A stretch of DNA of 64,000 nt from IMGVR_UViG_3300043464_001630:1-64000; one strand, 5' to 3'; shown: positions 852 through 13,357, numbered from the stretch's first letter. The notes: generated by a model not told the origin, from the sequence alone. Translations and numbers: made by a program.

Positions 852-1322
852 GTGATTTTAGATAGACACACTTCTTTTGGAGAAGTATTAGATTCAAAAA
901 AAGTTACTGTGTATCATTCATGTTCTTTCAACGGAGATTTTTTCAAAAGAATTTCTTCCCGACCAGACAAAAACATTCATGCTGGTTCGTTATTTCAAGC
1001 AGTCTGGAGAGCAGACTACAAAGTAAATGACGAAGAAGCGTATCCAGTTTCTTATATTTACGAATTGGTTCTGAAACCAGAACGTATTTATAATCAGCTA
1101 ATTCACGATTCGGGTGAAAATGTAGATCAAGCAGACGAAGATAGTTACAAAGAAAACTATGATCTATTAGTTTATCATAATACAGGAGAAGGTCACGCGA
1201 ATGAATCTAATCTATCTGTAATTATTCTAGATCATGGTATCATCAAATCTGTGAGATTGTATGCATCTATGAACGGCGAAGAGATCGGGAAGTTTATGGA
1301 GGAAAATAGTTTGACATTCTAG
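852..1322 (+). CDS. Hypothetical protein, ADP-ribosyltransferase-like fold
   Basis: VYH...IHAGS..QA...YDLLVYHNTGEG...SVIILD pattern, shared with ORF 3059. Confidence 0.4.
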   Translation: MILDRHTSFGEVLDSKKVTVYHSCSFNGDFFKRISSRPDKNIHAGSLFQAVWRADYKVNDEEAYPVSYIYELVLKPERIYNQLIHDSGENVDQADEDSYKENYDLLVYHNTGEGHANESNLSVIILDHGIIKSVRLYASMNGEEIGKFMEENSLTF

Positions 1323-1338
1323 TAAGATGTGGTAAAAT
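1311..1338 (+). promoter_or_regulatory. sigma70-type promoter upstream of the CAGCAA hairpin array
   Basis: TTGACA (1311) N16 TAAAAT with upstream TG. Confidence 0.55.
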
Positions 1339-1353
1339 TCTGTTAAATAAGTT

Positions 1354-1656
1354 TAGGTGCTTGCAGCAAATATTTTCCCCTTGTAATGGAAAAAAGGCAT
1401 CTAGTAAGTTTTAGATACACACAGCAAATATATAATATAATATGCAATTATACATCGTATCTAGTTGTTCTTTGTAATTTCCTCTAGAGGAATGACGTAG
1501 CGGATGTCACCGCAATATATATCTTATCAAGGAGACGGTAGAATTCCGTGTAATGAACTTAGTATTAGTAATCTAATGAAAGATTGAATTCGTCTTGGTA
1601 AGATAAATTTTAGATGCTTACAGCAAATTTTTATACACATGGAAAAAAAGCATCTA
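1354..1656 (+). ncRNA. Three related hairpin RNA units TAGRTRC-N3-CAGCAAA...GYATCTA (1354-1403, 1412-1463, 1611-1656)
   Basis: 7-bp closing stems with a compensatory change and a G-U wobble; invariant CAGCAAAT; variable loops. Confidence 0.65.
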
Positions 1657-1754
1657 GTGATAAAAAGTAGTTGAAATGGAGTGGAAGGTGTGGTATAGTG
1701 AGAGAGTAAGGTTGGTTGAGATCAATCTTAAAAAGTTCTTTAACAGATTTTAAC

Positions 1755-2053
1755 GGGAGAGAAGCTTAAGCAGGTTATAAGCGTCGGACTTCAGCCCACG
1801 TAAGTGGAACAGGGTCGGCTATTTAGAAATGAATAGTTAGTAAGGTGTATATCGGTGAACGGTTTAAAATCCCAACGCCGAGAGAAACCTCAGTAATGAG
1901 GGACTCGTAGAGACTACCATCACCTACCTAAAGTAGAAATACCAAGGTAAAGGCATAGTCCAGAGCACAAATTTACATAACTTATGTAAAGTGATGAAAA
2001 TCATAGTGTTAGGCATAATCCGAAGACAGTGGATTCGAATTCCACCTCTCCTA
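1755..2053 (+). tRNA. tRNA with CAU anticodon (Met or Ile2) split by a group I intron; exons 1755-1790 and 2014-2053
   Basis: Joined exons give acceptor GGGAGAG/CTCTCCT, D arm GCTT/AAGC, anticodon arm TCGGA-CT^CATAA-TCCGA, T arm GTGGA-TTCGAAT-TCCAC; no encoded CCA. Confidence 0.9.
1791..2013 (+). ncRNA. Group I self-splicing intron (223 nt) after U33
   Basis: P1 GACU/GGUC with U.G at 5' splice site; ATCGGTGAAC, GTAGAGACTA (R), GGCATAGTCC (S); terminal G. Confidence 0.9.
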
Positions 2054-2061
2054 CCTATGTT

Positions 2062-2096
2062 AAGAGCAGCTAGCTTTTTTAGTTAGCTGCTCTTTT
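2062..2096 (+). terminator. Intrinsic terminator after the tRNA
   Basis: AAGAGCAGCTAGC / GTTAGCTGCTCTT hairpin followed by T-rich run. Confidence 0.7.
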
Positions 2097-2124
2097 ATTT
2101 TGAGCTTTAAGACTAAATACTTAC

Positions 2125-2901
2125 ATGGAAACAAACCATGTAAGACCGACTAAATTGTGTACTAAATGTAATTGTAAAATTTCAGATAATAATATAAAAA
2201 AACATTTTGAAAAATGTAATGGAAAACCATCTTATGCTGTACGTAAATCCAACAGAATTCCTATAAATTCAAATTATAATAATGATTTATATAAGTCTAA
2301 ATTAGAAAATTTAAATTGGGAGGAAATACAAGCATTTTATGATGATAATCATTCATTTAGAGATGTACAAAAAAAGTACAATTTGCCAAATAATAGATTA
2401 ACTAAATATATTAAAGAAGGGTTTTTAAAAACTAGATCTTCTCACGAAACGATGAAGCTACGCGGGACTCGCCAAGTTCCGACAATGACTTCAGAAATGA
2501 GAGAAAAAATTAGTAAAGGAATGCGTAAAGCAGTATTAGAAGGCAGACAGAAAACACCAAGACCTTACGGTACATACGGAACTACAATTCATCATACTTC
2601 TTGGTTAGGTAATGACGAAGTATTACACGGTGGATGGGAACTTAAAGTAGCAAAATATATGGATGAGCATAAAATCTATTGGTGTAAATCAAAAGAACAT
2701 TTCACTTATATATTTGAAGAACGCGAACATGAATATTTTCCAGACTTCTATCTAAAAGATTATGACTTATTCATAGAAGTAAAAGGACAAGTAATGCCTA
2801 AAGATCTAGAAAAATGGAAACAATTTCCTCGAAAGCTTTTAATCATTGATCAAAAGACTATTAAACGATTGGACGAGTTTTTCTCTGATATCCAACACTA
2901 A
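2125..2901 (+). CDS. Free-standing putative homing endonuclease (Zn finger, NUMOD3-like, PD-(D/E)XK TnsA-like)
   Basis: CxxC..H..C, SEMREKISKGM, WELKVAKYMD...YFPDFYL...FIEVKG. Confidence 0.75.
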   Translation: METNHVRPTKLCTKCNCKISDNNIKKHFEKCNGKPSYAVRKSNRIPINSNYNNDLYKSKLENLNWEEIQAFYDDNHSFRDVQKKYNLPNNRLTKYIKEGFLKTRSSHETMKLRGTRQVPTMTSEMREKISKGMRKAVLEGRQKTPRPYGTYGTTIHHTSWLGNDEVLHGGWELKVAKYMDEHKIYWCKSKEHFTYIFEEREHEYFPDFYLKDYDLFIEVKGQVMPKDLEKWKQFPRKLLIIDQKTIKRLDEFFSDIQH

Positions 2902-2909
2902 ATACTCAT

Positions 2910-3050
2910 ATGAACAAATTTGATAAATTAGTAGAAAAAATACTAGAAGAACAAAAAAATACTGTTACCGAAGCCTGCTGGAAAAACTACAAACAGGTAG
3001 GCATGAAGAAAAAAGGTAAGAAGAAAGTACCGAATTGCGTACCTAAATAA
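2910..3050 (+). CDS. 46-aa basic peptide MNKFDKLVEKILEE...EACWKNYKQVGMKKKGKKKVPNCVPK (not in ORF track)
   Basis: Translated by hand; TAAATA at 2899; CW..YK..GMK.K..K.VPNCVP motif recalled from T4-like phage proteins. Confidence 0.7.
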   Translation: MNKFDKLVEKILEEQKNTVTEACWKNYKQVGMKKKGKKKVPNCVPK

Positions 3051-3058
3051 ATAATCGT

Positions 3059-3958
3059 ATGAATGATTCTTTATTAATCTGGGAAGCTTATCAAAATAGT
3101 ATATCTAATATAGTATATCACGTATCTAGAAAGAAATTTGACGACATCTATGATTGGAGTCATTTTACAAAAAACATACATGCTGCAAAAGATATTATCA
3201 ATACTGATAAATCAGAAGGAAAATATGTCGAAGGCAGCACGTATTATGTTTATAAATATAAAATGAATCCAGATTTAAAACTCATGAGAAGTGTGGATAT
3301 TCATTCCGAACATGTTCCTCAATGGGGTAATTCTGGTAGATCAAATGATTGGAGTAAACATATTCAAGGTATGTTTTATCTTCAGCAAACAGAAGATACA
3401 CAATTTAGAACCTATGTAACAAACGCAGTTTTAAATGAATTAAAAAGTAGATACGACAATAATCCAGAGAGAAAAAAATTATTTGAATTAATTTTAAATT
3501 TTCTTAACAAGAATCCTAAATATATTAAAATCCCAGAAAGCCAAGGAATGGACTCTCATAAGGCTTGGAAACCAGTCCATAATTATTTCATTAAAATTTT
3601 AGATCCAAATAAGACTAAATCCACACGAGAACTCATGAATTTATATAGTACTATGGCGACGATAATAGATTCTCTACAAATGATTCTCATTCGAAACATC
3701 AGTCAAAATGATTATGATAATGTTAAGTTGTGGAAAGTTTGGATTTTTGAATCAGACGATGATAATATTCACGGAAATTTTTTTTACGAAAACCAAATTA
3801 ATAAAAAGTCGTTTATTAATAATCTAATAACGTCATATTATGATGGCGTTGTATATAATAATGAAGTTGAAGGTGGAGGAGATTCTTATATTTTATTTCA
3901 TCCTAAGAGGGATCTACAATTAATAAGCAGAGAGATTTTACAAAATTCAGAAAATTAA
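3059..3958 (+). CDS. MND-leader protein with ART-like cargo
   Basis: MNDSLLIWEAY leader; VYH...HF...YDGVVYNNEVEGGGDSYILF. Confidence 0.55.
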   Translation: MNDSLLIWEAYQNSISNIVYHVSRKKFDDIYDWSHFTKNIHAAKDIINTDKSEGKYVEGSTYYVYKYKMNPDLKLMRSVDIHSEHVPQWGNSGRSNDWSKHIQGMFYLQQTEDTQFRTYVTNAVLNELKSRYDNNPERKKLFELILNFLNKNPKYIKIPESQGMDSHKAWKPVHNYFIKILDPNKTKSTRELMNLYSTMATIIDSLQMILIRNISQNDYDNVKLWKVWIFESDDDNIHGNFFYENQINKKSFINNLITSYYDGVVYNNEVEGGGDSYILFHPKRDLQLISREILQNSEN

Positions 3959-3959
3959 T

Positions 3960-5054
3960 ATGATAAAGAGAGATAAACAGATTATATGGGAAAGATATTT
4001 AGAGATCCTAAAAGAATCTCGTGTGGAAAGGTATTTGAATATGTATAATAAATTATTCAAAATATTTCCAGATGCAAAAGCCCCAGATAGTGTATATAAT
4101 CCAGCTAATTGCGAATTAGATTCTAGTCATTATAACCATACAAGAACTAGAAATTTAATAGAATTTAATTTTTGTTTAAAAAATGTAATAGATAAACTTA
4201 GAAGAGATGATATTATTCAGTGGTATATTAAAAAAACAATAAATGAAACAATTTGTACAATAATTGATAAAAAAATTTTTAATATTCGTTTAAAAACTAG
4301 AGCAAGTGGTTCAAATATAGAATATTTTTTAAAAACCGAACACCCAGAAATTTATGAAGAGTTCATTAAATTACGTGATCTTAAAACGAGTTTTTTTGAT
4401 ATAGAGTATTACAGTGCAATAGAAGTTGGTACGGAAACTTTATTGGAAAAATTAGAACATTATATTGCGTTAAATATACAAGACATAAACAACTTCCGAT
4501 TTGTTAATCAATCTATCGAAGATGTTTTAGAAAAATTTCAAACAATTGAACGTGAATGGCTTAAATCTATTAATAGTGTAATGGATATTACGGATGATTT
4601 AAAAAGCAAAAGAGTTAAGACACTATTAAAAATTGACGAAAACAACGAATGGCAAATAATAGATAGTTCATTTTGTACAAAAGAAGGAAAAGCAATGGGT
4701 CATTGTGGGAATAATGTAACTGGTGGAATTGATGATAAAAACACGAAGTTACTCAGTTATCGAACTATAACTCATAAAGGAGGTAAAGTTATAGCTAAAC
4801 CACATTTAACTTTTATTTATCATTTAAATGATATGTCTTTGTCTGAAAGAAAAGGAGCACAAAACGATAAACCAGTTGAGAAATATCACGAAGCTATATT
4901 AAAATTGTTAATGTTAAAAAAAGATAATGATTTCTTTATTAAGAAACTTAAAAACGAAGGATATTTGCCGCAAAATAATTTCGAAATATCTGATTTATCC
5001 GAAAATAACAGAAAGATTCTTGAACAAAATAGACCGGATTTATTCGAGGAATAA
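3960..5054 (+). CDS. Variant MND-leader protein with PcfJ-like C-terminal domain
   Basis: DKQIIWERY leader; EGKAMGHCG...PHLT...ERKGAQNDKP. Confidence 0.45.
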   Translation: MIKRDKQIIWERYLEILKESRVERYLNMYNKLFKIFPDAKAPDSVYNPANCELDSSHYNHTRTRNLIEFNFCLKNVIDKLRRDDIIQWYIKKTINETICTIIDKKIFNIRLKTRASGSNIEYFLKTEHPEIYEEFIKLRDLKTSFFDIEYYSAIEVGTETLLEKLEHYIALNIQDINNFRFVNQSIEDVLEKFQTIEREWLKSINSVMDITDDLKSKRVKTLLKIDENNEWQIIDSSFCTKEGKAMGHCGNNVTGGIDDKNTKLLSYRTITHKGGKVIAKPHLTFIYHLNDMSLSERKGAQNDKPVEKYHEAILKLLMLKKDNDFFIKKLKNEGYLPQNNFEISDLSENNRKILEQNRPDLFEE

Positions 5055-5314
5055 AAATTATAAATAAATAATCGTATGAAGCAAGAATGGCTCGAATTTT
5101 TAAAAGAACAAGATCCCGAATTATATCTACAAGCAAAGAGTTATATCGAAAAACTAGAATCCGAATTAGAAGAAAAGAAGATTATAGTTGAAAGATACCA
5201 AAATCTCATAGCATGTAACGGATTTTTTGATGAGAAATAGTTGACAAATTAGGGATATGTGGTAAATTAGTTGTGTAAGTGAAAGCTTACTTGTTCTTTG
5301 AATAGATAAAAAAA

Positions 5315-5577
5315 TCTCCTTTAGCATAGCTGGAAATGCGCCGTCCTGTTTTTTTTTATAAATGGCAGCTTATAGAAGTAATTCTATTTGAAAAATTCCG
5401 CTAAGTCGGTGAACGCTGAAACGCCAACGCCGAGCTAGCAGATCGCAAGATCGGGCAAGTGTAGAGACTTTACACGGAACATCCTTATGGGATGAAGACA
5501 AAGTCCATTCCACAGGAAATAAAACTTGTGGCTTTAAAGTAAGACGAAAAAGCAAGGTTCAAATCCTTGAGGGAGAG
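5315..5577 (+). tRNA. tRNA-Asn(GUU) split by a group I intron between positions 35 and 36; exons 5315-5349 and 5540-5577
   Basis: Acceptor TCTCCTT/AGGGAGA, discriminator G, D arm GCAT/ATGC, anticodon arm CGTC-CTGT^TAA-GACG, T arm CAAGG-TTCAAAT-CCTTG. Confidence 0.88.
5350..5539 (+). ncRNA. Group I self-splicing intron (190 nt)
   Basis: P1 CUGU/GCAG with U.G; GTCGGTGAAC...GCCGAG, GTAGAGACTT (R), GACAAAGTCC (S); terminal G at 5539. Confidence 0.88.
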
Positions 5578-5595
5578 CTTCTATTTGATTATCAA

Positions 5596-6555
5596 CTACT
5601 TACATAAATTTCTTTCTTTTAGTATTTTCTTATAAATTAATTTTAGATCCGGTACGGTATCAAAATCTATCCATAAGCATTTGTAATTATTTTTATTACA
5701 ATATTCTTCTAATGCTTTCTTTTTATGTGGTATGTGTAAATTGTATTTATGATTAGACTTTGATGTCCATTTTTGTTTAATCTCTACTATATGTGTTTGG
5801 TTATTAATATAACATATAAAATCTGGGTTGTATGTTTTATTTTTAATTCCGTCATTGTAAATTAATATATTTTTAAATCTTTCTATTGATACTGCATTTA
5901 GTTTGTCTATTAAATAGATTAATCCTGCTTTCTCTAAATTAGAATCTACTTCTATTGAAGTATTTTTATATGTAAAATGTTCTCTAGGTGTGGAGAAATT
6001 TCCATTCTTTTCTAAATATTTTTGTCTTTGTATGGAAATACTTAAAAATTTACAAGCTTCGCTACAAGTTTTTCGCTTTTTTTCTTTTGTACTATAAAAT
6101 TGTTTAGAACATACGGAACATACGTATTCTTGATTTGTATATTTTGAATATGTTTTACCTATATTGTTTATCCTTAGATGCTTAGTTGATTCGTATTTCT
6201 TTAATAAAGATTCCGAAGTTTTCTTTTTTGTTTCTTCTGTTATTATTCTGTTGGAATTATTAAATTTAGCTGAACAAGAACTAGAACAAAAGTAATTGTA
6301 AGTTTTTCCTTCTTTTAATTTCATTCTTTTATCTGCTGACTTTTCCAAAAACTTATCATATCCGATAACAATATTACATTGTTTACAGTGTTCTGGAGAT
6401 TCTAGATATTTTAATGTATTCTCTTCCTTTTGTTTTTTCCCGCGTTCTTTTATAAGAATAATATCCAAACCACTTCTTTTTACATGATGTGCTTTGTGTC
6501 CCTGTAAAGCCATTTTTTTATCAAACTCTTTATTACATATTTCGCATTTATACAT
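5596..6555 (-). CDS. Free-standing putative homing endonuclease (C2H2/Zn ribbons, NUMOD3-like, TnsA-like PD-(D/E)XK)
   Basis: YKCEIC...H...H, several CxxC, TEETKKKTSESL, DSNLE...YNPDF...IVEIKQ. Confidence 0.75.
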   Translation of the reverse strand: MYKCEICNKEFDKKMALQGHKAHHVKRSGLDIILIKERGKKQKEENTLKYLESPEHCKQCNIVIGYDKFLEKSADKRMKLKEGKTYNYFCSSSCSAKFNNSNRIITEETKKKTSESLLKKYESTKHLRINNIGKTYSKYTNQEYVCSVCSKQFYSTKEKKRKTCSEACKFLSISIQRQKYLEKNGNFSTPREHFTYKNTSIEVDSNLEKAGLIYLIDKLNAVSIERFKNILIYNDGIKNKTYNPDFICYINNQTHIVEIKQKWTSKSNHKYNLHIPHKKKALEEYCNKNNYKCLWIDFDTVPDLKLIYKKILKERNLCK

Positions 6556-6652
6556 ACATTATTATTTAGCTTCAAAACTTATTTAAAGAGCCTTTTAATT
6601 TTTCTCCTTGACTTCTTCACCACATATGATAAATTATTGTAGTTAATTAAAT

Positions 6653-6740
6653 GCATCGGTATACTGCTAAATACGCAGCTTGGACTGTAAATCCAATATC
6701 CTCTAGGATTGGTTAGGAGAGTTACCTAAACGGTGCACCA
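6653..6740 (+). tRNA. tRNA-Tyr(GUA) with atypical D and T loops
   Basis: Anticodon arm TTGGA-CTGTAAA-TCCAA, long variable arm ATCC/GGAT, T stem TTAGG/CCTAA with loop AGAGTTA, ends ACCA. Confidence 0.75.
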
Positions 6741-6994: not shown

Positions 6995-7123
6995 AAACTT
7001 TCAGTAACCACAACCCCACTGGTATATAGGTCTTGTTATGATTGGAATGTAATAACATAGAAATCCTGCTGAAAACTAGCCACACATATTAATTTATGTG
7101 TGGCTTTTCTGTTAAATAATAAC

Positions 7124-8395
7124 ATGAATCGTAGAGATTTCATTTACACTGGGCTTGTAGGTGGATTAGGATTATCAATGGGTGACATCCTAAAATTACA
7201 AGCAGAATCCTCCTTGACTCCTAAAGCTCAGTCTGTTATTCATATCTTTTTACCGGGGGGTGCGGCATCACATGAAACGTTTGATCCACATCCACTTGCT
7301 CCTTCTGAGTATAGAGGCCCATTAAAAGCTATTCCTACTTCAGTAGTAGGACTACAATTCTCTGAATACTTACAGAAAACGGCAAAAATTGCAGATAAGC
7401 TCACAGTAGTACATTCCATGACACACGGAGAAGCCGCACACGAACGTGGGGTTACTTCTATGTTCACTGGCTATCGTCCATCTCCAGCATTAGAATATCC
7501 ATCATTTGGTTCTGTAATATCTAATCAATTAGGAGATAGAAATAATCTACCAGCATATGTTTGTATTCCACAGAAGATTGGTAACAATGGTAACGATCCA
7601 GCAGATAGTGGGTACTTATCGAAAGCATACGGCCCTTTTAGTTTAGGTTCTGATCCCGCCAACCTTGGATTTAAGGTTCGTGATTTAAATGTAGAAGTAG
7701 GATCAGAACGATTCGAAAGACGTAAATCTATTTTAGACACAGTAGATAGTCATTTTCGTTATTTAGAATCTAGTGATAACTTAGCAGCAATGGATACTTT
7801 CTATCAAAAGGCATTTGATTTAATATCTTCGCCAAAAGCTAAAGAAGCGTTTGCCTTGGATAAAGAACCCCAAGTGATGCGTGAAGCATACGGAATGAAC
7901 CAAGCAGGTCAGAGATTGTTAATGGCTCGTAGATTAGTAGAAGCAGGTGTAAGATTTGTTTCCGTAACTTATGGTGGATGGGATATGCATTCGGGGATTG
8001 CCAACGGAATAGGTAAACAACTACCCTCATTTGATCAGGCTTATGCAACACTCATTAATGATTTAGATCAGAGAGGAATGTTAGATTCAACACTAGTTAT
8101 GATCTCTTCTGAATTTGGTAGAACTCCGAAGATTAACAAAGATGCAGGGCGTGATCATTGGCCTAGAGTATTCTCTGTAGTGTTTGCTGGTGGTGGTTTT
8201 AAACGTGGTTATGTTTACGGTTCTTCTGATGCCACAGGAAGTGATGTAGAAAGTAATCCATTAACAGTAGAAAACCTAGCGGCTACAATGTATAATCAAT
8301 TAGGTATTGATCCAGAAACAAAACTCATGGCGGCAGGTGGAAGACCATCAGCTATTGTAAAAGATGGTACTGTAGTTAAAGATTTGTTAGTATAA
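7124..8395 (+). CDS. DUF1501 family protein (Tat-exported, alkaline phosphatase/sulfatase-like)
   Basis: MNRRDFI Tat motif; IFLPGGAASHETFDP, ARRLVEAGVRFV, GWDMH, SEFGRTP, GRDHWP; likely start ATG 7124 after TAAATA. Confidence 0.9.
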   Translation: MNRRDFIYTGLVGGLGLSMGDILKLQAESSLTPKAQSVIHIFLPGGAASHETFDPHPLAPSEYRGPLKAIPTSVVGLQFSEYLQKTAKIADKLTVVHSMTHGEAAHERGVTSMFTGYRPSPALEYPSFGSVISNQLGDRNNLPAYVCIPQKIGNNGNDPADSGYLSKAYGPFSLGSDPANLGFKVRDLNVEVGSERFERRKSILDTVDSHFRYLESSDNLAAMDTFYQKAFDLISSPKAKEAFALDKEPQVMREAYGMNQAGQRLLMARRLVEAGVRFVSVTYGGWDMHSGIANGIGKQLPSFDQAYATLINDLDQRGMLDSTLVMISSEFGRTPKINKDAGRDHWPRVFSVVFAGGGFKRGYVYGSSDATGSDVESNPLTVENLAATMYNQLGIDPETKLMAAGGRPSAIVKDGTVVKDLLV

Positions 8396-10173: not shown

Positions 10174-10776
10174 GTGAGACAAAATTATATTAAGATTTCT
10201 AAGCTAGCTAAAGATCTAGGAGTAACTAAACAAACTCTTTGGAACTGGAAATATGCTGGTGAAGTTGATTTTGTTAAAATAGGTGGGTTAAATTGTGTAA
10301 CTAAAGAAACATACAATAATCTATTAGGAATAGAAAACAAGAAAAAAGAATCTGTTGTGATTTATTGTAGGGTTTCTTCGACGGAAAATAAATCTAATAT
10401 AGAAACACAAAAACAAAGATTGTTAAATTATTGCAATGCAAAAGGTTACAAAGTATCTGATGTGATACAAGAGTTTGGTTCTGGTATCAACGATAAGAGA
10501 CCAAAACTCGAAAAATTATTAAAACAGCAAAATTTTACAAAACTAGTAGTAGAACATAAAGATCGTCTAACAAGAGTAGGATTTAATTATATCAATACAC
10601 TGCTAAACTTCAATCATATTGAGATTGAAGTAGTTAATTCTGTTGATGATGATAGAACTGATTTAATACAAGATTTCATATCAATTATTACATCTTATTG
10701 TGCTAGAATTTACGGCAACAGAAGATCAAAAAGAAAAACTGAACAATTAATAAAGGAGCTTGAATCCAATGAGTAG
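10174..10776 (+). CDS. tnpA: IS607 serine recombinase TnpA
   Basis: N-terminal HTH (LGVTKQTLWNW), IYCRVSS, GSGINDKR, VEHKDRLTR, DLIQDFISIITSYCARIYG. Confidence 0.93.
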   Translation: MRQNYIKISKLAKDLGVTKQTLWNWKYAGEVDFVKIGGLNCVTKETYNNLLGIENKKKESVVIYCRVSSTENKSNIETQKQRLLNYCNAKGYKVSDVIQEFGSGINDKRPKLEKLLKQQNFTKLVVEHKDRLTRVGFNYINTLLNFNHIEIEVVNSVDDDRTDLIQDFISIITSYCARIYGNRRSKRKTEQLIKELESNE

Positions 10777-12355
10777 ATGCACAAAGAGTTATTCTTTCTA
10801 CTCGAAAGATCTTAACATAGGCAAATTCAATCTCTTTTTGAAGAAAGCCGAAGCAGTCAGAGATTATAAGAATGCTTTATCTGTCGAAATTTCATCTAAT
10901 CTCTTGAAGTACACTGAAGTTTCTAAGTTTGATTTCCTTAAAATGTTTGGTACGAAAACTAATTATTTGAATCCTAGCTCATTAATGAGAGGAAACGAAA
11001 TACAAAAAGCTGTAGCGGATGTGTTTGAAGCTTATCAAAATAAAATAACACAAATTAAACAAAAAATGTCTTTCTTTGTTCAAAAAGGAAAAGAGGTAGA
11101 ATTTTACAAAAGAAACACAAAAAATAATAAAAAAGGTGATGTTAGAAGTTATGAAATAAAAACTAAAAATACTCCATTGACAAAAACAATCACATTTCTA
11201 TCTCGTTATGGTTCCGAAAACACACTAGATTATGTCAATAAAAGAGCGAATCAAAATGATGACAAACAAGATTTCTATAAGACACTAAAAATACATATTC
11301 AAAAGTTTGGCTTAGAAAGATTGTCGAAACTTGCTTACAGCAAAAGAACACAAGTTCTAAATAAGTATAATTATCCAATCACATTCACCTCTCTATCTTA
11401 TCGTTCTGCTCTTCAGACGAACGATCCTTTGATTCAAAATTCCAAGAACAAAACATTTTCAAATGGAACTATTTCAATACCAAGCTTTAATGGAAAACAT
11501 ATGTTTGTTCCGACTACATTCAATGTAAAACATCATGGTCATTTGAATCAATATAAATCAAAAGAGTATATAATTTGTATCGAACAAAAGCGAAAAAGAA
11601 TCAGACTGATTACTACAAAAGAAACAGAAGAAACTATTTCTCCAGAAGGAATAAATTATTTAGGTGTTGACACCAACGTCAAACATAATCTATTTGCTAC
11701 TTCAGATGGAATGAATATTGACATGGACAGAGATTTGTTTCATGGTTATATTGCTTTTCTAAAGAAATACCAAGACAAGAAAGAACATACTTCTGGAGAA
11801 GATCAACAATTTGAACTATGGCAAGAACGTGTTCAGTGTATGCTCAAAAAGAAAGCTAGAGAGTTAGTTGATGTGGCTATAGCTTCTGGTAAGAATCATA
11901 TCATCATGGAAGATCTTGGTAACTTTGGTAAATCTTACACTAAATCAGAAGAGTTCGAAGGATTCAAATATTCTAGATTAACACGATTACTCAATCTTTC
12001 TTCTCTAAACAAAATTGTTAAAGGCATTTGTAAGAAGCTTGGTGTTAGACTAACTCTCATTCCTTCTCATTATACATCTCAGTGGTGCTTTGACTGTGGA
12101 CACATAGACAAAGCTAACAGAACCACCCAAGAAATTTTCCAATGTGTTTGTTGCAATGTAACAGCAAATTCAGACTTTCATTCTTCACGAGCCATCCTTA
12201 GGATAGGTTCTTCAGACGTTCTGAAGAGCAATATGCTCGTGATGGATAAATCATTCGATTGGATTCCTAAGAAACTCTCAAAAGGTTTCATAAGAAAACA
12301 ATTGGAAGAAATAATTCCTAAAACAACTTTTCAGTTGAATTGTCAAACTTTATAG
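10760..12355 (+). CDS. tnpB: TnpB RNA-guided RuvC nuclease (long, 531 aa)
   Basis: LGVD (RuvC-I), IMEDL (RuvC-II), YTSQWCFDCGH...CVCC Zn ribbon, NSD (RuvC-III). Confidence 0.88.
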   Translation: MNPMSRCTKSYSFYSKDLNIGKFNLFLKKAEAVRDYKNALSVEISSNLLKYTEVSKFDFLKMFGTKTNYLNPSSLMRGNEIQKAVADVFEAYQNKITQIKQKMSFFVQKGKEVEFYKRNTKNNKKGDVRSYEIKTKNTPLTKTITFLSRYGSENTLDYVNKRANQNDDKQDFYKTLKIHIQKFGLERLSKLAYSKRTQVLNKYNYPITFTSLSYRSALQTNDPLIQNSKNKTFSNGTISIPSFNGKHMFVPTTFNVKHHGHLNQYKSKEYIICIEQKRKRIRLITTKETEETISPEGINYLGVDTNVKHNLFATSDGMNIDMDRDLFHGYIAFLKKYQDKKEHTSGEDQQFELWQERVQCMLKKKARELVDVAIASGKNHIIMEDLGNFGKSYTKSEEFEGFKYSRLTRLLNLSSLNKIVKGICKKLGVRLTLIPSHYTSQWCFDCGHIDKANRTTQEIFQCVCCNVTANSDFHSSRAILRIGSSDVLKSNMLVMDKSFDWIPKKLSKGFIRKQLEEIIPKTTFQLNCQTL

Positions 12356-12646: not shown

Positions 12647-13357
12647 ATGATTAAATTCTCAAAAGAGATTATGGAATTGGCATTATCAATGATGCCGCGT
12701 TGTGATCTCGTTAAGGTTATGTGCTCAATGGGAATAGACAGTCTTGCTGTTTCTCATTTCTTCGAAAAGAAAATTAAAGACAAATACGGTTCTTGGGGCA
12801 TAATGCACTTCAATCATGAACAGAGACAACAAAATTATTTGATGGAAGAAAGTTATTGTAATTTTGGTTATAACTATGGTATTCCTAGATATTCTCCGGT
12901 TCGTTTAAAATCCGGAGGCTATTATGGCAGTTCTCTAGAACCAACCGAAGATAACTTCAGGGAAGCTAGACTTAATTATATTAAAAGAAGTCAGCATATT
13001 AATACAATCTTCATTACTGCTCATCATTTAGACGATGCCGCAGAAAGCTATATGCTGAATGTTTTGCGGGGTAAAGAAGGATTCTTACCCATTCCATTCA
13101 TTACAGAAGTAGGACGTAACTTAATTGTTCATCCTTTTCTTTTTACGAAGAAGAAAGATTTCAGGGAATATGCAGAAAAGAACAATCTCATGAAATATGT
13201 CGTAGAGGATGAGACTAATAAGGTAACTAAAGGAAGCAGAAGAAACTTTATTAGAAACGAGATTATGCCTCTTATTCAAAGAGAGAAGATGGGACTCGAC
13301 ACAATCGTTAAAAAGAAAATGAAAGAACGATTGATGTTGGAAATTATAAAATCTTGA
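12647..13357 (+). CDS. tilS: tRNA(Ile)-lysidine synthetase
   Basis: PP-loop SMGIDS, HFNH, TAHHLDDAAES, EDETN, RNFIRNEIMP. Confidence 0.85.
   Translation: MIKFSKEIMELALSMMPRCDLVKVMCSMGIDSLAVSHFFEKKIKDKYGSWGIMHFNHEQRQQNYLMEESYCNFGYNYGIPRYSPVRLKSGGYYGSSLEPTEDNFREARLNYIKRSQHINTIFITAHHLDDAAESYMLNVLRGKEGFLPIPFITEVGRNLIVHPFLFTKKKDFREYAEKNNLMKYVVEDETNKVTKGSRRNFIRNEIMPLIQREKMGLDTIVKKKMKERLMLEIIKS

What the first reader, a model, noticed from the sequence alone, without database searches (positions are those of the whole stretch)
1755..6555. Each ORF-less tRNA intron is paired with an adjacent free-standing endonuclease (possible collaborative homing at tRNA anticodons)
Seen: PD-(D/E)XK/NUMOD3-like nuclease genes lie about 70 bp after the CAU tRNA (2125) and about 20 bp after tRNA-Asn (5596-6555), and both introns lack ORFs. 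Known: free-standing homing endonucleases can cut intron-less alleles, with the intron protecting self. Inference: each nuclease targets the intact anticodon arm of the matching tRNA gene in competing phages, or even the host.
Basis: inference. Interest (0 to 1): 0.6.

Follow-up and report, generated by a model that had tools for sequence, protein, structure and literature searches.

The report
tRNA-linked phage homing nucleases and introns
In a 236-kb uncultured phage, the only two clear tRNA genes each carry a small self-splicing intron and sit beside a selfish DNA-cutting enzyme gene. Relatives show that each enzyme family tracks one particular tRNA gene rather than the intron.

Summary
tRNA(CAU) (1755-2055) carries a 223-nt intron and tRNA-Asn (5315-5578) a 190-nt intron. 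Both are ORF-less group I introns of one family, common in phage and bacterial tRNA anticodon loops. A model built from 29 other phage introns hits both (E 2.5e-27 and 1.9e-19).

ORF A (2125-2901, +) is a Zn-finger plus T7-endonuclease-I-like PD-(D/E)XK nuclease. ORF B (5596-6555) is a C2H2/Zn-ribbon plus TnsA/Hjc-like PD-(D/E)XK nuclease. ORF B lies on the minus strand, convergent with tRNA-Asn.

- **Family A and tRNA(CAU):** it is the nearest tRNA in 69 of 130 loci (24/55 against 5.9 expected, p=5e-10). Almost all of these tRNAs lack an intron, including the one in the closest relative.
- **Family B and tRNA(GUU):** they are adjacent in 8 of 10 contexts. Four carry the intron and four have an extra-long variable arm. 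None is a plain tRNA-Asn (p about 1e-4, post hoc).
- **Independent assortment:** the intron occurs without the nuclease and the nuclease without the intron.

These look like free-standing homing nucleases aimed at specific tRNA genes. The introns appear to be separate passengers that may be co-converted. An intron-as-shield role is plausible for B, unnecessary for A, and untested. I found no evidence of host targeting.

The parts
1671..1699 (+). promoter-like site (TTGAAA-17-TG-TATAGT) ahead of tRNA(CAU)
   Evidence: the leader 1664-1753 is conserved in relatives (83%)
1755..1790 (+). tRNA(CAU) exon 1, ending at U33
   Evidence: the same exon end (GGACT) is seen in intron-bearing tRNA(CAU) genes of Verrucomicrobia
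1791..2013 (+). ORF-less group I intron 1 (223 nt) between nt 33 and 34 of the anticodon loop
   Evidence: model R1 scores 121 bits, E 2.5e-27; core motifs are shared with intron 2; no Rfam hit
2014..2055 (+). tRNA(CAU) exon 2 (anticodon CAT onward; 3' end ...ACC)
2062..2094 (+). terminator-like hairpin between tRNA(CAU) and ORF A
   Evidence: 14 pairs plus a T run
2125..2901 (+). ORF A, 258 aa: N-terminal CxxC..HxxxC finger, NUMOD3-like stretch, C-terminal T7-endonuclease-I-like PD-(D/E)XK domain (E172, D207, E218, K220)
5241..5268 (+). promoter-like site (TTGACA-16-TG-TAAATT) ahead of tRNA-Asn
5315..5349 (+). tRNA-Asn(GUU) exon 1, ending at U35
   Evidence: intron-less allele L052:6476-6551
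5350..5539 (+). ORF-less group I intron 2 (190 nt) between nt 35 and 36
   Evidence: 93% identical copy in G001
5540..5578 (+). tRNA-Asn exon 2
5596..6555 (-). ORF B, 319 aa, convergent with tRNA-Asn: C2H2 finger, two CxxC..C..C modules, C-terminal PD-(D/E)XK domain (E208, D245, E258, K260)
6608..6635 (+). promoter-like site ahead of the tRNA-Tyr-like gene
6652..6740 (+). divergent tRNA-Tyr(GUA)-like gene; ORF B is an insertion in the spacer between tRNA-Asn and this gene
   Evidence: colinear with tRNA-Tyr of L050, L053 and G001; not called by ARAGORN or Rfam

Best explanation
The phage's small tRNA cluster (CAU, Asn, Tyr-like) has been colonised by two kinds of selfish element that are separate but physically linked.

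(1) Two ORF-less self-splicing group I introns sit in the anticodon loops. They belong to the Azoarcus/cyanobacterial-type tRNA-intron family.

(2) Two free-standing homing-type endonuclease genes flank them. Each comes from a family that keeps to one tRNA isoacceptor gene: A beside tRNA(CAU), B beside tRNA-Asn.

The likely mechanism is as follows. In a mixed infection, each nuclease cuts the cognate tRNA locus of a phage that lacks it. Recombinational repair then copies the nuclease gene and its neighbouring DNA into the cut genome, including the tRNA allele and its intron when one is present. On this reading the introns are passengers that can be co-converted (trans-homing). They are not obligatory partners.

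Shown here: intron identity, nuclease folds and motifs, tRNA-specific linkage, and presence/absence polymorphism. Inferred: DNA cleavage, the position of the cut, gene conversion, and any shielding by the intron.
For: **Introns.**. The same core occurs in 45 IMG/VR contigs and 97 bacterial contigs, mostly in anticodon loops.

**Nuclease folds.** ORF A matches T7 endonuclease I (1m0d, E 9e-7) with an invariant E/D/E/K set. ORF B matches TnsA at Z 8.3, with Hjc, XisH and I-Bth0305I lower in the list, and also has an invariant E/D/E/K set.

**Family A linkage.**
- 105 of 130 distinct loci have a tRNA within 400 bp, and tRNA(CAU) is the nearest in 69.
- In clusters of 5 or more tRNAs, CAU is nearest in 24 of 55 against 5.9 expected (p=5e-10).
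- In cultured phage PhaxI the homologue overlaps the start of tRNA-Met.

**Family B linkage.** 8 of 10 independent contexts abut tRNA(GUU).

**Sporadic presence.**
- ORF B is a clean insertion in the Asn-Tyr spacer. It is absent from G001 and L053.
- ORF A is absent beside tRNA(CAU) in L050 and L231.

**Allele swapping.** The tRNA(CAU) body beside ORF A differs completely between relatives, while its leader and ORF A are conserved.
Against:
- Most family-A genes sit beside an intact tRNA(CAU). If the tRNA itself is the target, self-immunity has to come from something unseen, such as site polymorphism or disruption of a flanking site.
- Linkage could partly reflect tRNA clusters being permissive insertion zones.
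- The loci were retrieved through one conserved peptide pattern and are not phylogenetically independent.
- ORFs flanking intron-bearing tRNAs are not significantly richer in Pfam nuclease domains than those flanking intron-less tRNAs (about 7/39 against 4/51, p=0.2).
Confidence: 0.55

Rival explanations
1. Strict collaborative homing. Each nuclease cuts the uninterrupted anticodon arm at the intron insertion site, the intron makes the carrier immune, and nuclease and intron spread as a pair.
For: - The adjacency in the window is real.
- In the ORF A clade (40% identity or more), 4 of about 8 neighbouring tRNA(CAU) genes carry the intron: window, L052, L133 and L137.
- In family B, 4 of 8 adjacent tRNA-Asn genes carry the intron, against 0 of 36 in unrelated phage clusters (p=5e-4).
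- The other 4 have an 82-91-nt long-variable-arm form, so none is a plain tRNA-Asn (8/8 against 10/39, p=1.4e-4).
Against: - G001 has ORF A with an intron-less tRNA(CAU), and the Asn intron with no ORF B. L053 is similar for ORF A.
- About 66 of 69 family-A neighbours are intron-less.
- L231 has the CAU intron without an adjacent ORF A.
- L052 keeps a plain intron-less tRNA-Asn next to a nuclease that shares ORF B's N-terminal fingers.
- The family B statistics are post hoc and the carriers are related to each other.
Confidence: 0.2
2. The nucleases are not homing enzymes. They serve the phage, for example as junction resolvases or in degrading host DNA, and merely reside in the tRNA region, which tolerates insertions.
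For: - T7 endonuclease I, Hjc and TnsA are not homing enzymes.
- tRNA clusters hold many unrelated small genes and nucleases.
- ORF A is retained beside tRNA(CAU) in most of the close relatives examined.
Against: - The linkage is specific to one isoacceptor (p=5e-10 for A; 8 of 10 contexts for B).
- The added Zn-finger and NUMOD-like DNA-binding modules are typical of site-specific homing enzymes.
- Presence and absence vary at the same locus.
- Relatives of ORF B keep its finger domain but carry a different nuclease domain.
Confidence: 0.15
3. The nucleases attack the host's own tRNA genes or host DNA, and the phage copies are shielded by their introns.
For: No direct evidence. The closest matches to the CAU intron are in Verrucomicrobia, whose chromosomal tRNA(CAU) genes carry an intron at the same site. 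Host and phage therefore appear to share this intron lineage.
Against: - If the host gene is also interrupted at that site, it would be as immune as the phage gene.
- None of the 97 bacterial loci has these nucleases.
- The host is unknown.
Confidence: 0.05

Closest known systems
Collaborative homing / trans-homing: F-CphI with the ORF-less psbA intron of cyanophage S-PM2, and T4 mobE with the td intron (PMC3984707, PMC6083498, PMC2790892)
   Same: [quoted passage not shown]
   Different: - The targets here are tRNA genes, not protein genes.
- The nucleases are PD-(D/E)XK, not EndoVII-like or HNH.
- Among relatives, the nuclease follows the tRNA gene whether or not the intron is there.
- Cleavage at the insertion site is not shown.
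I-Ssp6803I, the PD-(D/E)XK endonuclease encoded in the tRNA-fMet intron of Synechocystis (cited in PMC3984707, ref. 105; the enzyme's details are from my own knowledge)
   Same: A PD-(D/E)XK nuclease is tied to a CAU-anticodon tRNA gene that carries a group I intron in its anticodon loop.
   Different: - ORF A is free-standing, not intron-encoded.
- It is longer and has a T7-endonuclease-I-type core.
- No sequence match to that protein turned up in the PDB profile search.
T4 SegB, a GIY-YIG homing endonuclease inside the tRNA gene cluster (PMC2330249, PMC13096335)
   Same: A free-standing homing nuclease lives among phage tRNA genes and drives preferential inheritance of that region.
   Different: - The catalytic family differs.
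- No introns are involved.
- No linkage to a single isoacceptor across many phage groups has been described.
Azoarcus tRNA-Ile and cyanobacterial tRNA-Leu/fMet group I introns (PMC13168695, PMC3984707)
   Same: Compact (about 200 nt), ORF-less introns in the anticodon loop. The P3-P8 core sequence resembles the Azoarcus intron as I recall it from memory; this was not aligned here.
   Different: Here they are in phage genomes. The 2014 review states that all phage introns known then lay in protein-coding genes.
T7 endonuclease I (PDB 1m0d, 1fzr)
   Same: ORF A's C-terminal 60-70 residues align to it with the catalytic E, D, E and K.
   Different: ORF A has about 160 extra N-terminal residues with a zinc finger and a NUMOD3-like stretch. 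Its genomic context is a tRNA gene, not a recombination module.

Membership tests
Group I intron (tRNA anticodon-loop family) | Conserved P3-P8 core with covarying helices | tested here: met
   An alignment of 29 other phage tRNA introns has 18 of 28 pairs with compensatory changes. The model built from it hits both window introns at E 2.5e-27 and 1.9e-19.
Group I intron (tRNA anticodon-loop family) | U before the 5' splice site, paired with G in P1; terminal G at the 3' end | tested here: met
   By inspection. CAU...GGACU|UCAG...GUUAGG|CAUAA, with GACU pairing to GGUC. Asn...CCUGU|UUUU...UUAAAG|UAAGA, with CUGU pairing to GCAG.
Group I intron (tRNA anticodon-loop family) | Rfam RF00028 gathering score (50 bits) | tested here: not met
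   Intron 2 scores 35.3 bits (E 2e-6). Intron 1 gives no hit at E<=10.
Group I intron (tRNA anticodon-loop family) | Existence of a precise intron-less allele | tested here: met
   Asn: L052:6476-6551 matches the two exons at 97% and 92%. CAU: the intron-less alleles found (G001, L053) are too diverged to fix the junction. Bacterial tRNA(CAU) genes have an intron at the identical site.
Group I intron (tRNA anticodon-loop family) | Self-splicing | not testable with these tools
PD-(D/E)XK nuclease, T7 endonuclease I type (ORF A) | Sequence or profile match and a catalytic E...PD...ExK set | tested here: met
   Profile A2 against 1m0d gives E 9.3e-7. E172, D207, E218 and K220 are invariant in 27 sequences. 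The Pfam Phage_endo_I hit is only E 9.5e-4, below its cut-off.
PD-(D/E)XK nuclease (ORF B) | Fold match and catalytic residues | tested here: met
   The model has pLDDT 84. Residues 186-319 match TnsA at Z 8.3 (127 aligned residues), then XisH, Hjc, FAN1 and I-Bth0305I. E208, D245, E258 and K260 are invariant in 20 sequences. The Z score is moderate and there is no sequence hit in the PDB.
NUMOD3 DNA-binding motif | Pfam PF07460 match | tested here: inconclusive
   There is no hit in ORF A or ORF B at E<=0.1. Distant family-A members carry PF07460, and a family-B member gives a weak hit at E 0.0065.
Free-standing homing endonuclease | Sporadic presence or absence at the same intergenic site among close relatives | tested here: met
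   ORF B is present in the window, L050, L218 and L231, and absent in G001 and L053, which have an intact Asn-Tyr spacer. ORF A is absent beside tRNA(CAU) in L050 and L231.
Free-standing homing endonuclease | Site-specific cleavage of the nuclease-less allele and gene conversion | not testable with these tools
   This needs enzyme assays or mixed infections.
Collaborative homing | Nuclease and ORF-less intron co-occur across relatives | tested here: not met
   For A: the nuclease sits beside intron-less tRNA(CAU) in G001, L053 and about 66 other loci, and L231 has the intron without the nuclease. For B: enriched (4/8 against 0/36) but not obligatory, since G001 has the intron without B.
Collaborative homing | The cleavage site equals the intron insertion site, and the intron-plus allele is immune | not testable with these tools
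   No biochemical data.

The most novel reading that the evidence does not exclude
Phages may carry whole families of PD-(D/E)XK homing nucleases, each specialised on the gene of one tRNA isoacceptor. Carriers of the Asn-specific family would always hold a 'disarmed' tRNA-Asn gene, interrupted either by a group I intron in the anticodon loop or by an extra variable arm. Introns and odd extra arms in phage tRNAs would then act as immunity devices against nucleases that target tRNA genes. This would be a DNA-level arms race fought over tRNA genes, with intron-plus-nuclease pairs as intermediates on the path to mobile introns.
Probability: 0.2. Interest if true: 0.8.

Novelty: new variant of a known kind. 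Interest (0 to 1): 0.6.

Why it matters
- A 2014 review states that phage group I introns were known only in protein-coding genes. Here one intron family turns up in dozens of phage tRNA genes. I found no paper in the held library that describes this.
- Nuclease families that each track a single tRNA gene would be a new kind of homing-site specialisation. They would also be a source of compact, sequence-specific PD-(D/E)XK enzymes.
- The system offers natural intron-plus and intron-minus alleles, and nuclease-plus and nuclease-minus alleles. These could test the proposed route by which free-standing nucleases and ORF-less introns become mobile introns.

Tried and rejected
- **Default detectors.** Default ARAGORN and Rfam at gathering scores find no tRNA or intron in the window. 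Intron-aware ARAGORN and a custom model were needed.
- **Alternative anticodon.** ARAGORN at -ps85 offers an alternative reading, tRNA-SeC(UCA) with the intron shifted by 3 nt. I rejected it because that placement has neither U at -1 nor a terminal G.
- **Paralogy of A and B.** BLASTP and hhalign find no homology between the two nuclease domains. They are not paralogues.
- **Nuclease inside an intron.** ARAGORN suggested this for L064, L074, L086 and L192. I rejected them as group I introns: there is no ribozyme core, no Rfam hit, and the ORF fills the gap.
- **General pairing of intron-bearing tRNAs with nucleases.** The Pfam scan of flanking ORFs was not significant (p=0.2).
- **Motif AACTTACA after tRNAs.** It is not enriched.
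- **Single-sequence searches of viral contigs.** These found only one close relative.
- **Joined exons.** They were examined only inside the script box with ARAGORN.


Full report
**Setting.** The window is bases 1-64000 of a 236,391-bp IMG/VR virus record, estimated complete, with 35% G+C. Neither Rfam's tRNA model nor default ARAGORN finds any tRNA in the whole genome.

**The two interrupted tRNA genes**

tRNA-Asn: intron-aware ARAGORN calls tRNA-Asn(GTT) at 5315-5578 with a 190-nt intron at 5350-5539, between anticodon nt 35 and 36. Rfam's group I model matches 5346-5522 at 35.3 bits (E 2e-6), below its gathering score. A relative carries the exact intron-less allele (L052:6476-6551), which fixes the junction.

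tRNA(CAU): the gene is 1755-2055, read by hand with exons 1755-1790 and 2014-2055 around a 223-nt intron at 1791-2013. I joined the two exons only inside a script. ARAGORN calls the joined form tRNA-Met(cat) just under its default threshold.

Rfam misses intron 1. I therefore aligned 29 other phage tRNA introns, none of them from this genome or from the matching introns of its close relatives. The consensus has P3, P4, P5, P6, P8 and P9, with compensatory changes in 18 of 28 pairs. The model built from this alignment hits 1831-2013 (121 bits, E 2.5e-27) and 5383-5546 (88 bits, E 1.9e-19), with no other significant hit in the window. Both splice sites follow group I rules by inspection. Both introns are too short to encode a protein.

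**How common these introns are**

The shared core motif occurs in 45 IMG/VR contigs, mostly inside anticodon loops of tRNA-Leu(UAA), Lys, Met, Asn, Ser, Arg and suppressor tRNAs. It also occurs in 97 bacterial contigs from many phyla.

Verrucomicrobial chromosomal tRNA(CAU) genes carry an intron at exactly the same site as the window's. The best DNA matches to intron 1 are in Verrucomicrobia.

In an independent sample of 718 distinct phage tRNAs, 13 (1.8%) carry such an intron: 2 of 101 tRNA(CAU) and 0 of 36 tRNA-Asn.

A 2014 review says all phage introns known then were in protein-coding genes. My searches of the held library found no later report of phage tRNA introns.

**The two nucleases**

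ORF A (2125-2901, +, 258 aa) has three parts: an N-terminal CxxC..HxxxC finger, a NUMOD3-like stretch, and a C-terminal domain.
- The family profile matches T7 endonuclease I (1m0d, E 9.3e-7).
- E172, D207, E218 and K220 are invariant.
- The Pfam and PHROG hits are weak but point the same way.

ORF B (5596-6555, minus strand, 319 aa) has a C2H2 finger, two further Cys4-type modules and a C-terminal domain.
- E208, D245, E258 and K260 are invariant.
- The predicted fold (pLDDT 84) is most like TnsA (Z 8.3), followed by XisH, Hjc, FAN1 and the I-Bth0305I catalytic domain.

The two nuclease domains are not detectably related to each other. Both genes are single-copy in the genome.

A group of shorter relatives of about 222 aa keeps ORF B's N-terminal fingers (60-70% identity) but carries a different, Vsr-like nuclease domain. 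Such domain shuffling is typical of homing enzymes.

**Close relatives: intron and nuclease assort independently**

| Genome | tRNA(CAU) | ORF A | tRNA-Asn | ORF B |
|---|---|---|---|---|
| Window | intron | adjacent | intron | adjacent, convergent |
| G001 (242,607 bp, syntenic) | intron-less, very different body | 71% homologue adjacent | same intron, 93% identical | absent from the whole genome |
| L052 | intron | 75% homologue adjacent | plain, intron-less | absent; a short domain-swapped nuclease sits there |
| L053 | intron-less | 60% homologue adjacent | intron-less | absent |
| L050 | intron-less | none adjacent | intron-less, 90 nt, odd | 87% homologue between it and tRNA-Tyr |
| L231 | intron | none adjacent | intron | 62% homologue, convergent |

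Comparing the window with L053 shows that ORF B is a clean insertion in the roughly 100-bp spacer between the tRNA-Asn trailer and the tRNA-Tyr promoter.

Between the window and G001, the tRNA(CAU) body is replaced outright, while its leader (83%) and ORF A (77%) are conserved.

**Family-wide context**

Family A: a profile search returned 159 loci, of which 130 are non-identical.
- 105 have a tRNA within 400 bp.
- In 69, the nearest tRNA is tRNA(CAU). It lies just downstream on the same strand in 41, upstream in 21 and on the opposite strand in 6. In one (L064) ARAGORN placed the nuclease ORF between two tRNA halves; I rejected that as a group I intron.
- Only two of these tRNA(CAU) genes carry a real intron (L133, L137).
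- In clusters of 5 or more tRNAs, CAU is nearest in 24 of 55 against 5.9 expected (p=5e-10).
- In cultured Escherichia phage PhaxI, the homologue overlaps the start of tRNA-Met. In Acinetobacter phage Apostate, it lies between tRNA genes.

Family B: there are ten independent contexts.
- Four abut a tRNA-Asn with the intron: window, L218, L231 and L213.
- Four abut an intron-less tRNA(GUU) of 82-91 nt with a long variable arm: L050, L222, L227 and L229.
- One lies between tRNA-Met and tRNA-Val, and one has no tRNA nearby.
- None abuts a plain tRNA-Asn of 73-78 nt.

In background phage clusters, 0 of 36 tRNA-Asn genes have the intron and 10 of 39 are long. This gives p=5e-4 for the intron and p=1.4e-4 for 'not plain'. 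I noticed this pattern after looking at the data, and the carriers are partly related. It is a lead, not a result.

None of the 97 bacterial intron loci has a member of either nuclease family.

**Reading**

Three features fit free-standing homing endonucleases that use particular tRNA genes as homing sites: the modular DNA-binding plus nuclease build, the insertion-type polymorphism, and the isoacceptor-specific linkage. T4 SegB does something similar in its tRNA cluster (PMC2330249).

The introns belong to an old, widespread tRNA-intron family and assort independently of the nucleases. Where the two are linked, a cut near the tRNA would co-convert the intron. That is the trans-homing half of the collaborative model (PMC2790892, PMC3984707).

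The other half of that model, cleavage at the insertion site with the intron as shield, is not needed for family A, because most carriers hold an intact tRNA(CAU). For family B it remains an open and attractive possibility. Nothing here bears on host targeting.

**Limits**

- There are no splicing, cleavage or expression data.
- Loci were retrieved through short conserved peptide patterns.
- The statistics treat loci as independent.

Noticed in passing
window 6652-6740 (+): A third tRNA-like gene: a Tyr(GUA) anticodon arm, a hairpin variable arm, a non-canonical T-loop (AGAGTTA), an encoded CCA and its own promoter at 6608-6635. It is colinear with the tRNA-Tyr of relatives but is missed by ARAGORN and Rfam.
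   Followed up: partly
whole genome G000: This 236-kb phage has no tRNA that standard tools can find. Its only clear tRNAs are the two intron-bearing ones.
   Followed up: yes
window 1311-1660 (+): The best promoter match in the region (1311-1338, 11 of 12) is followed by two similar hairpin-forming repeats (about 1345-1400 and 1603-1658) and no ORF. This may be a small RNA locus. It is partly conserved in G001.
   Followed up: no
window 12647-13357 (+): A PP-loop ATPase of the TilS family (PF01171, E 2e-22), also present beside the tRNA cluster in relatives. It hints that the CAU tRNA is an AUA-reading tRNA-Ile2 rather than tRNA-Met.
   Followed up: partly
window 10174-12355 (+): A serine resolvase followed by a TnpB/Cas12f-like protein, which looks like an IS607-type element inside the phage. 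Relatives carry TnpB genes in the same region.
   Followed up: no
window 7100-8395 (+): A DUF1501 protein with a twin-arginine-like leader. Relatives also carry a PSCyt2-like gene. Together with the Verrucomicrobial intron matches, this suggests a host in the Planctomycetes-Verrucomicrobia group.
   Followed up: partly
L064:246-1055, L074:4681-5465, L086:4822-5588, L192:522-1389: In four unrelated contigs, a family-A nuclease ORF lies between a good tRNA 5' half and a matching 3' half, with the break at the anticodon loop. There is no ribozyme core, and in L064 the tRNA 5' end is partly duplicated. These could be scars of nuclease insertion into tRNA genes.
   Followed up: partly
L050:5962-6051, L222:3880-3961, L227:2874-2956, L229:2806-2989 and 10 of 39 background tRNA-Asn genes: About a quarter of phage tRNA(GUU) genes are 80-92 nt long, with an extra variable-arm hairpin often capped by a GNRA loop. 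That is unusual for tRNA-Asn.
   Followed up: partly
L052:6553-7224, L007:2480-3241, L019:2-616, L033:4245-4943: Short nucleases with ORF B-type fingers and a Vsr-like catalytic domain sit convergent with, and often overlap, the 3' end of tRNA genes. Twice the neighbour is an intron-bearing tRNA-Leu(UAA).
   Followed up: partly
L051:3356-3780: A relative of this phage encodes a tmRNA (Rfam RF00023, 89 bits). None was found in the window.
   Followed up: no
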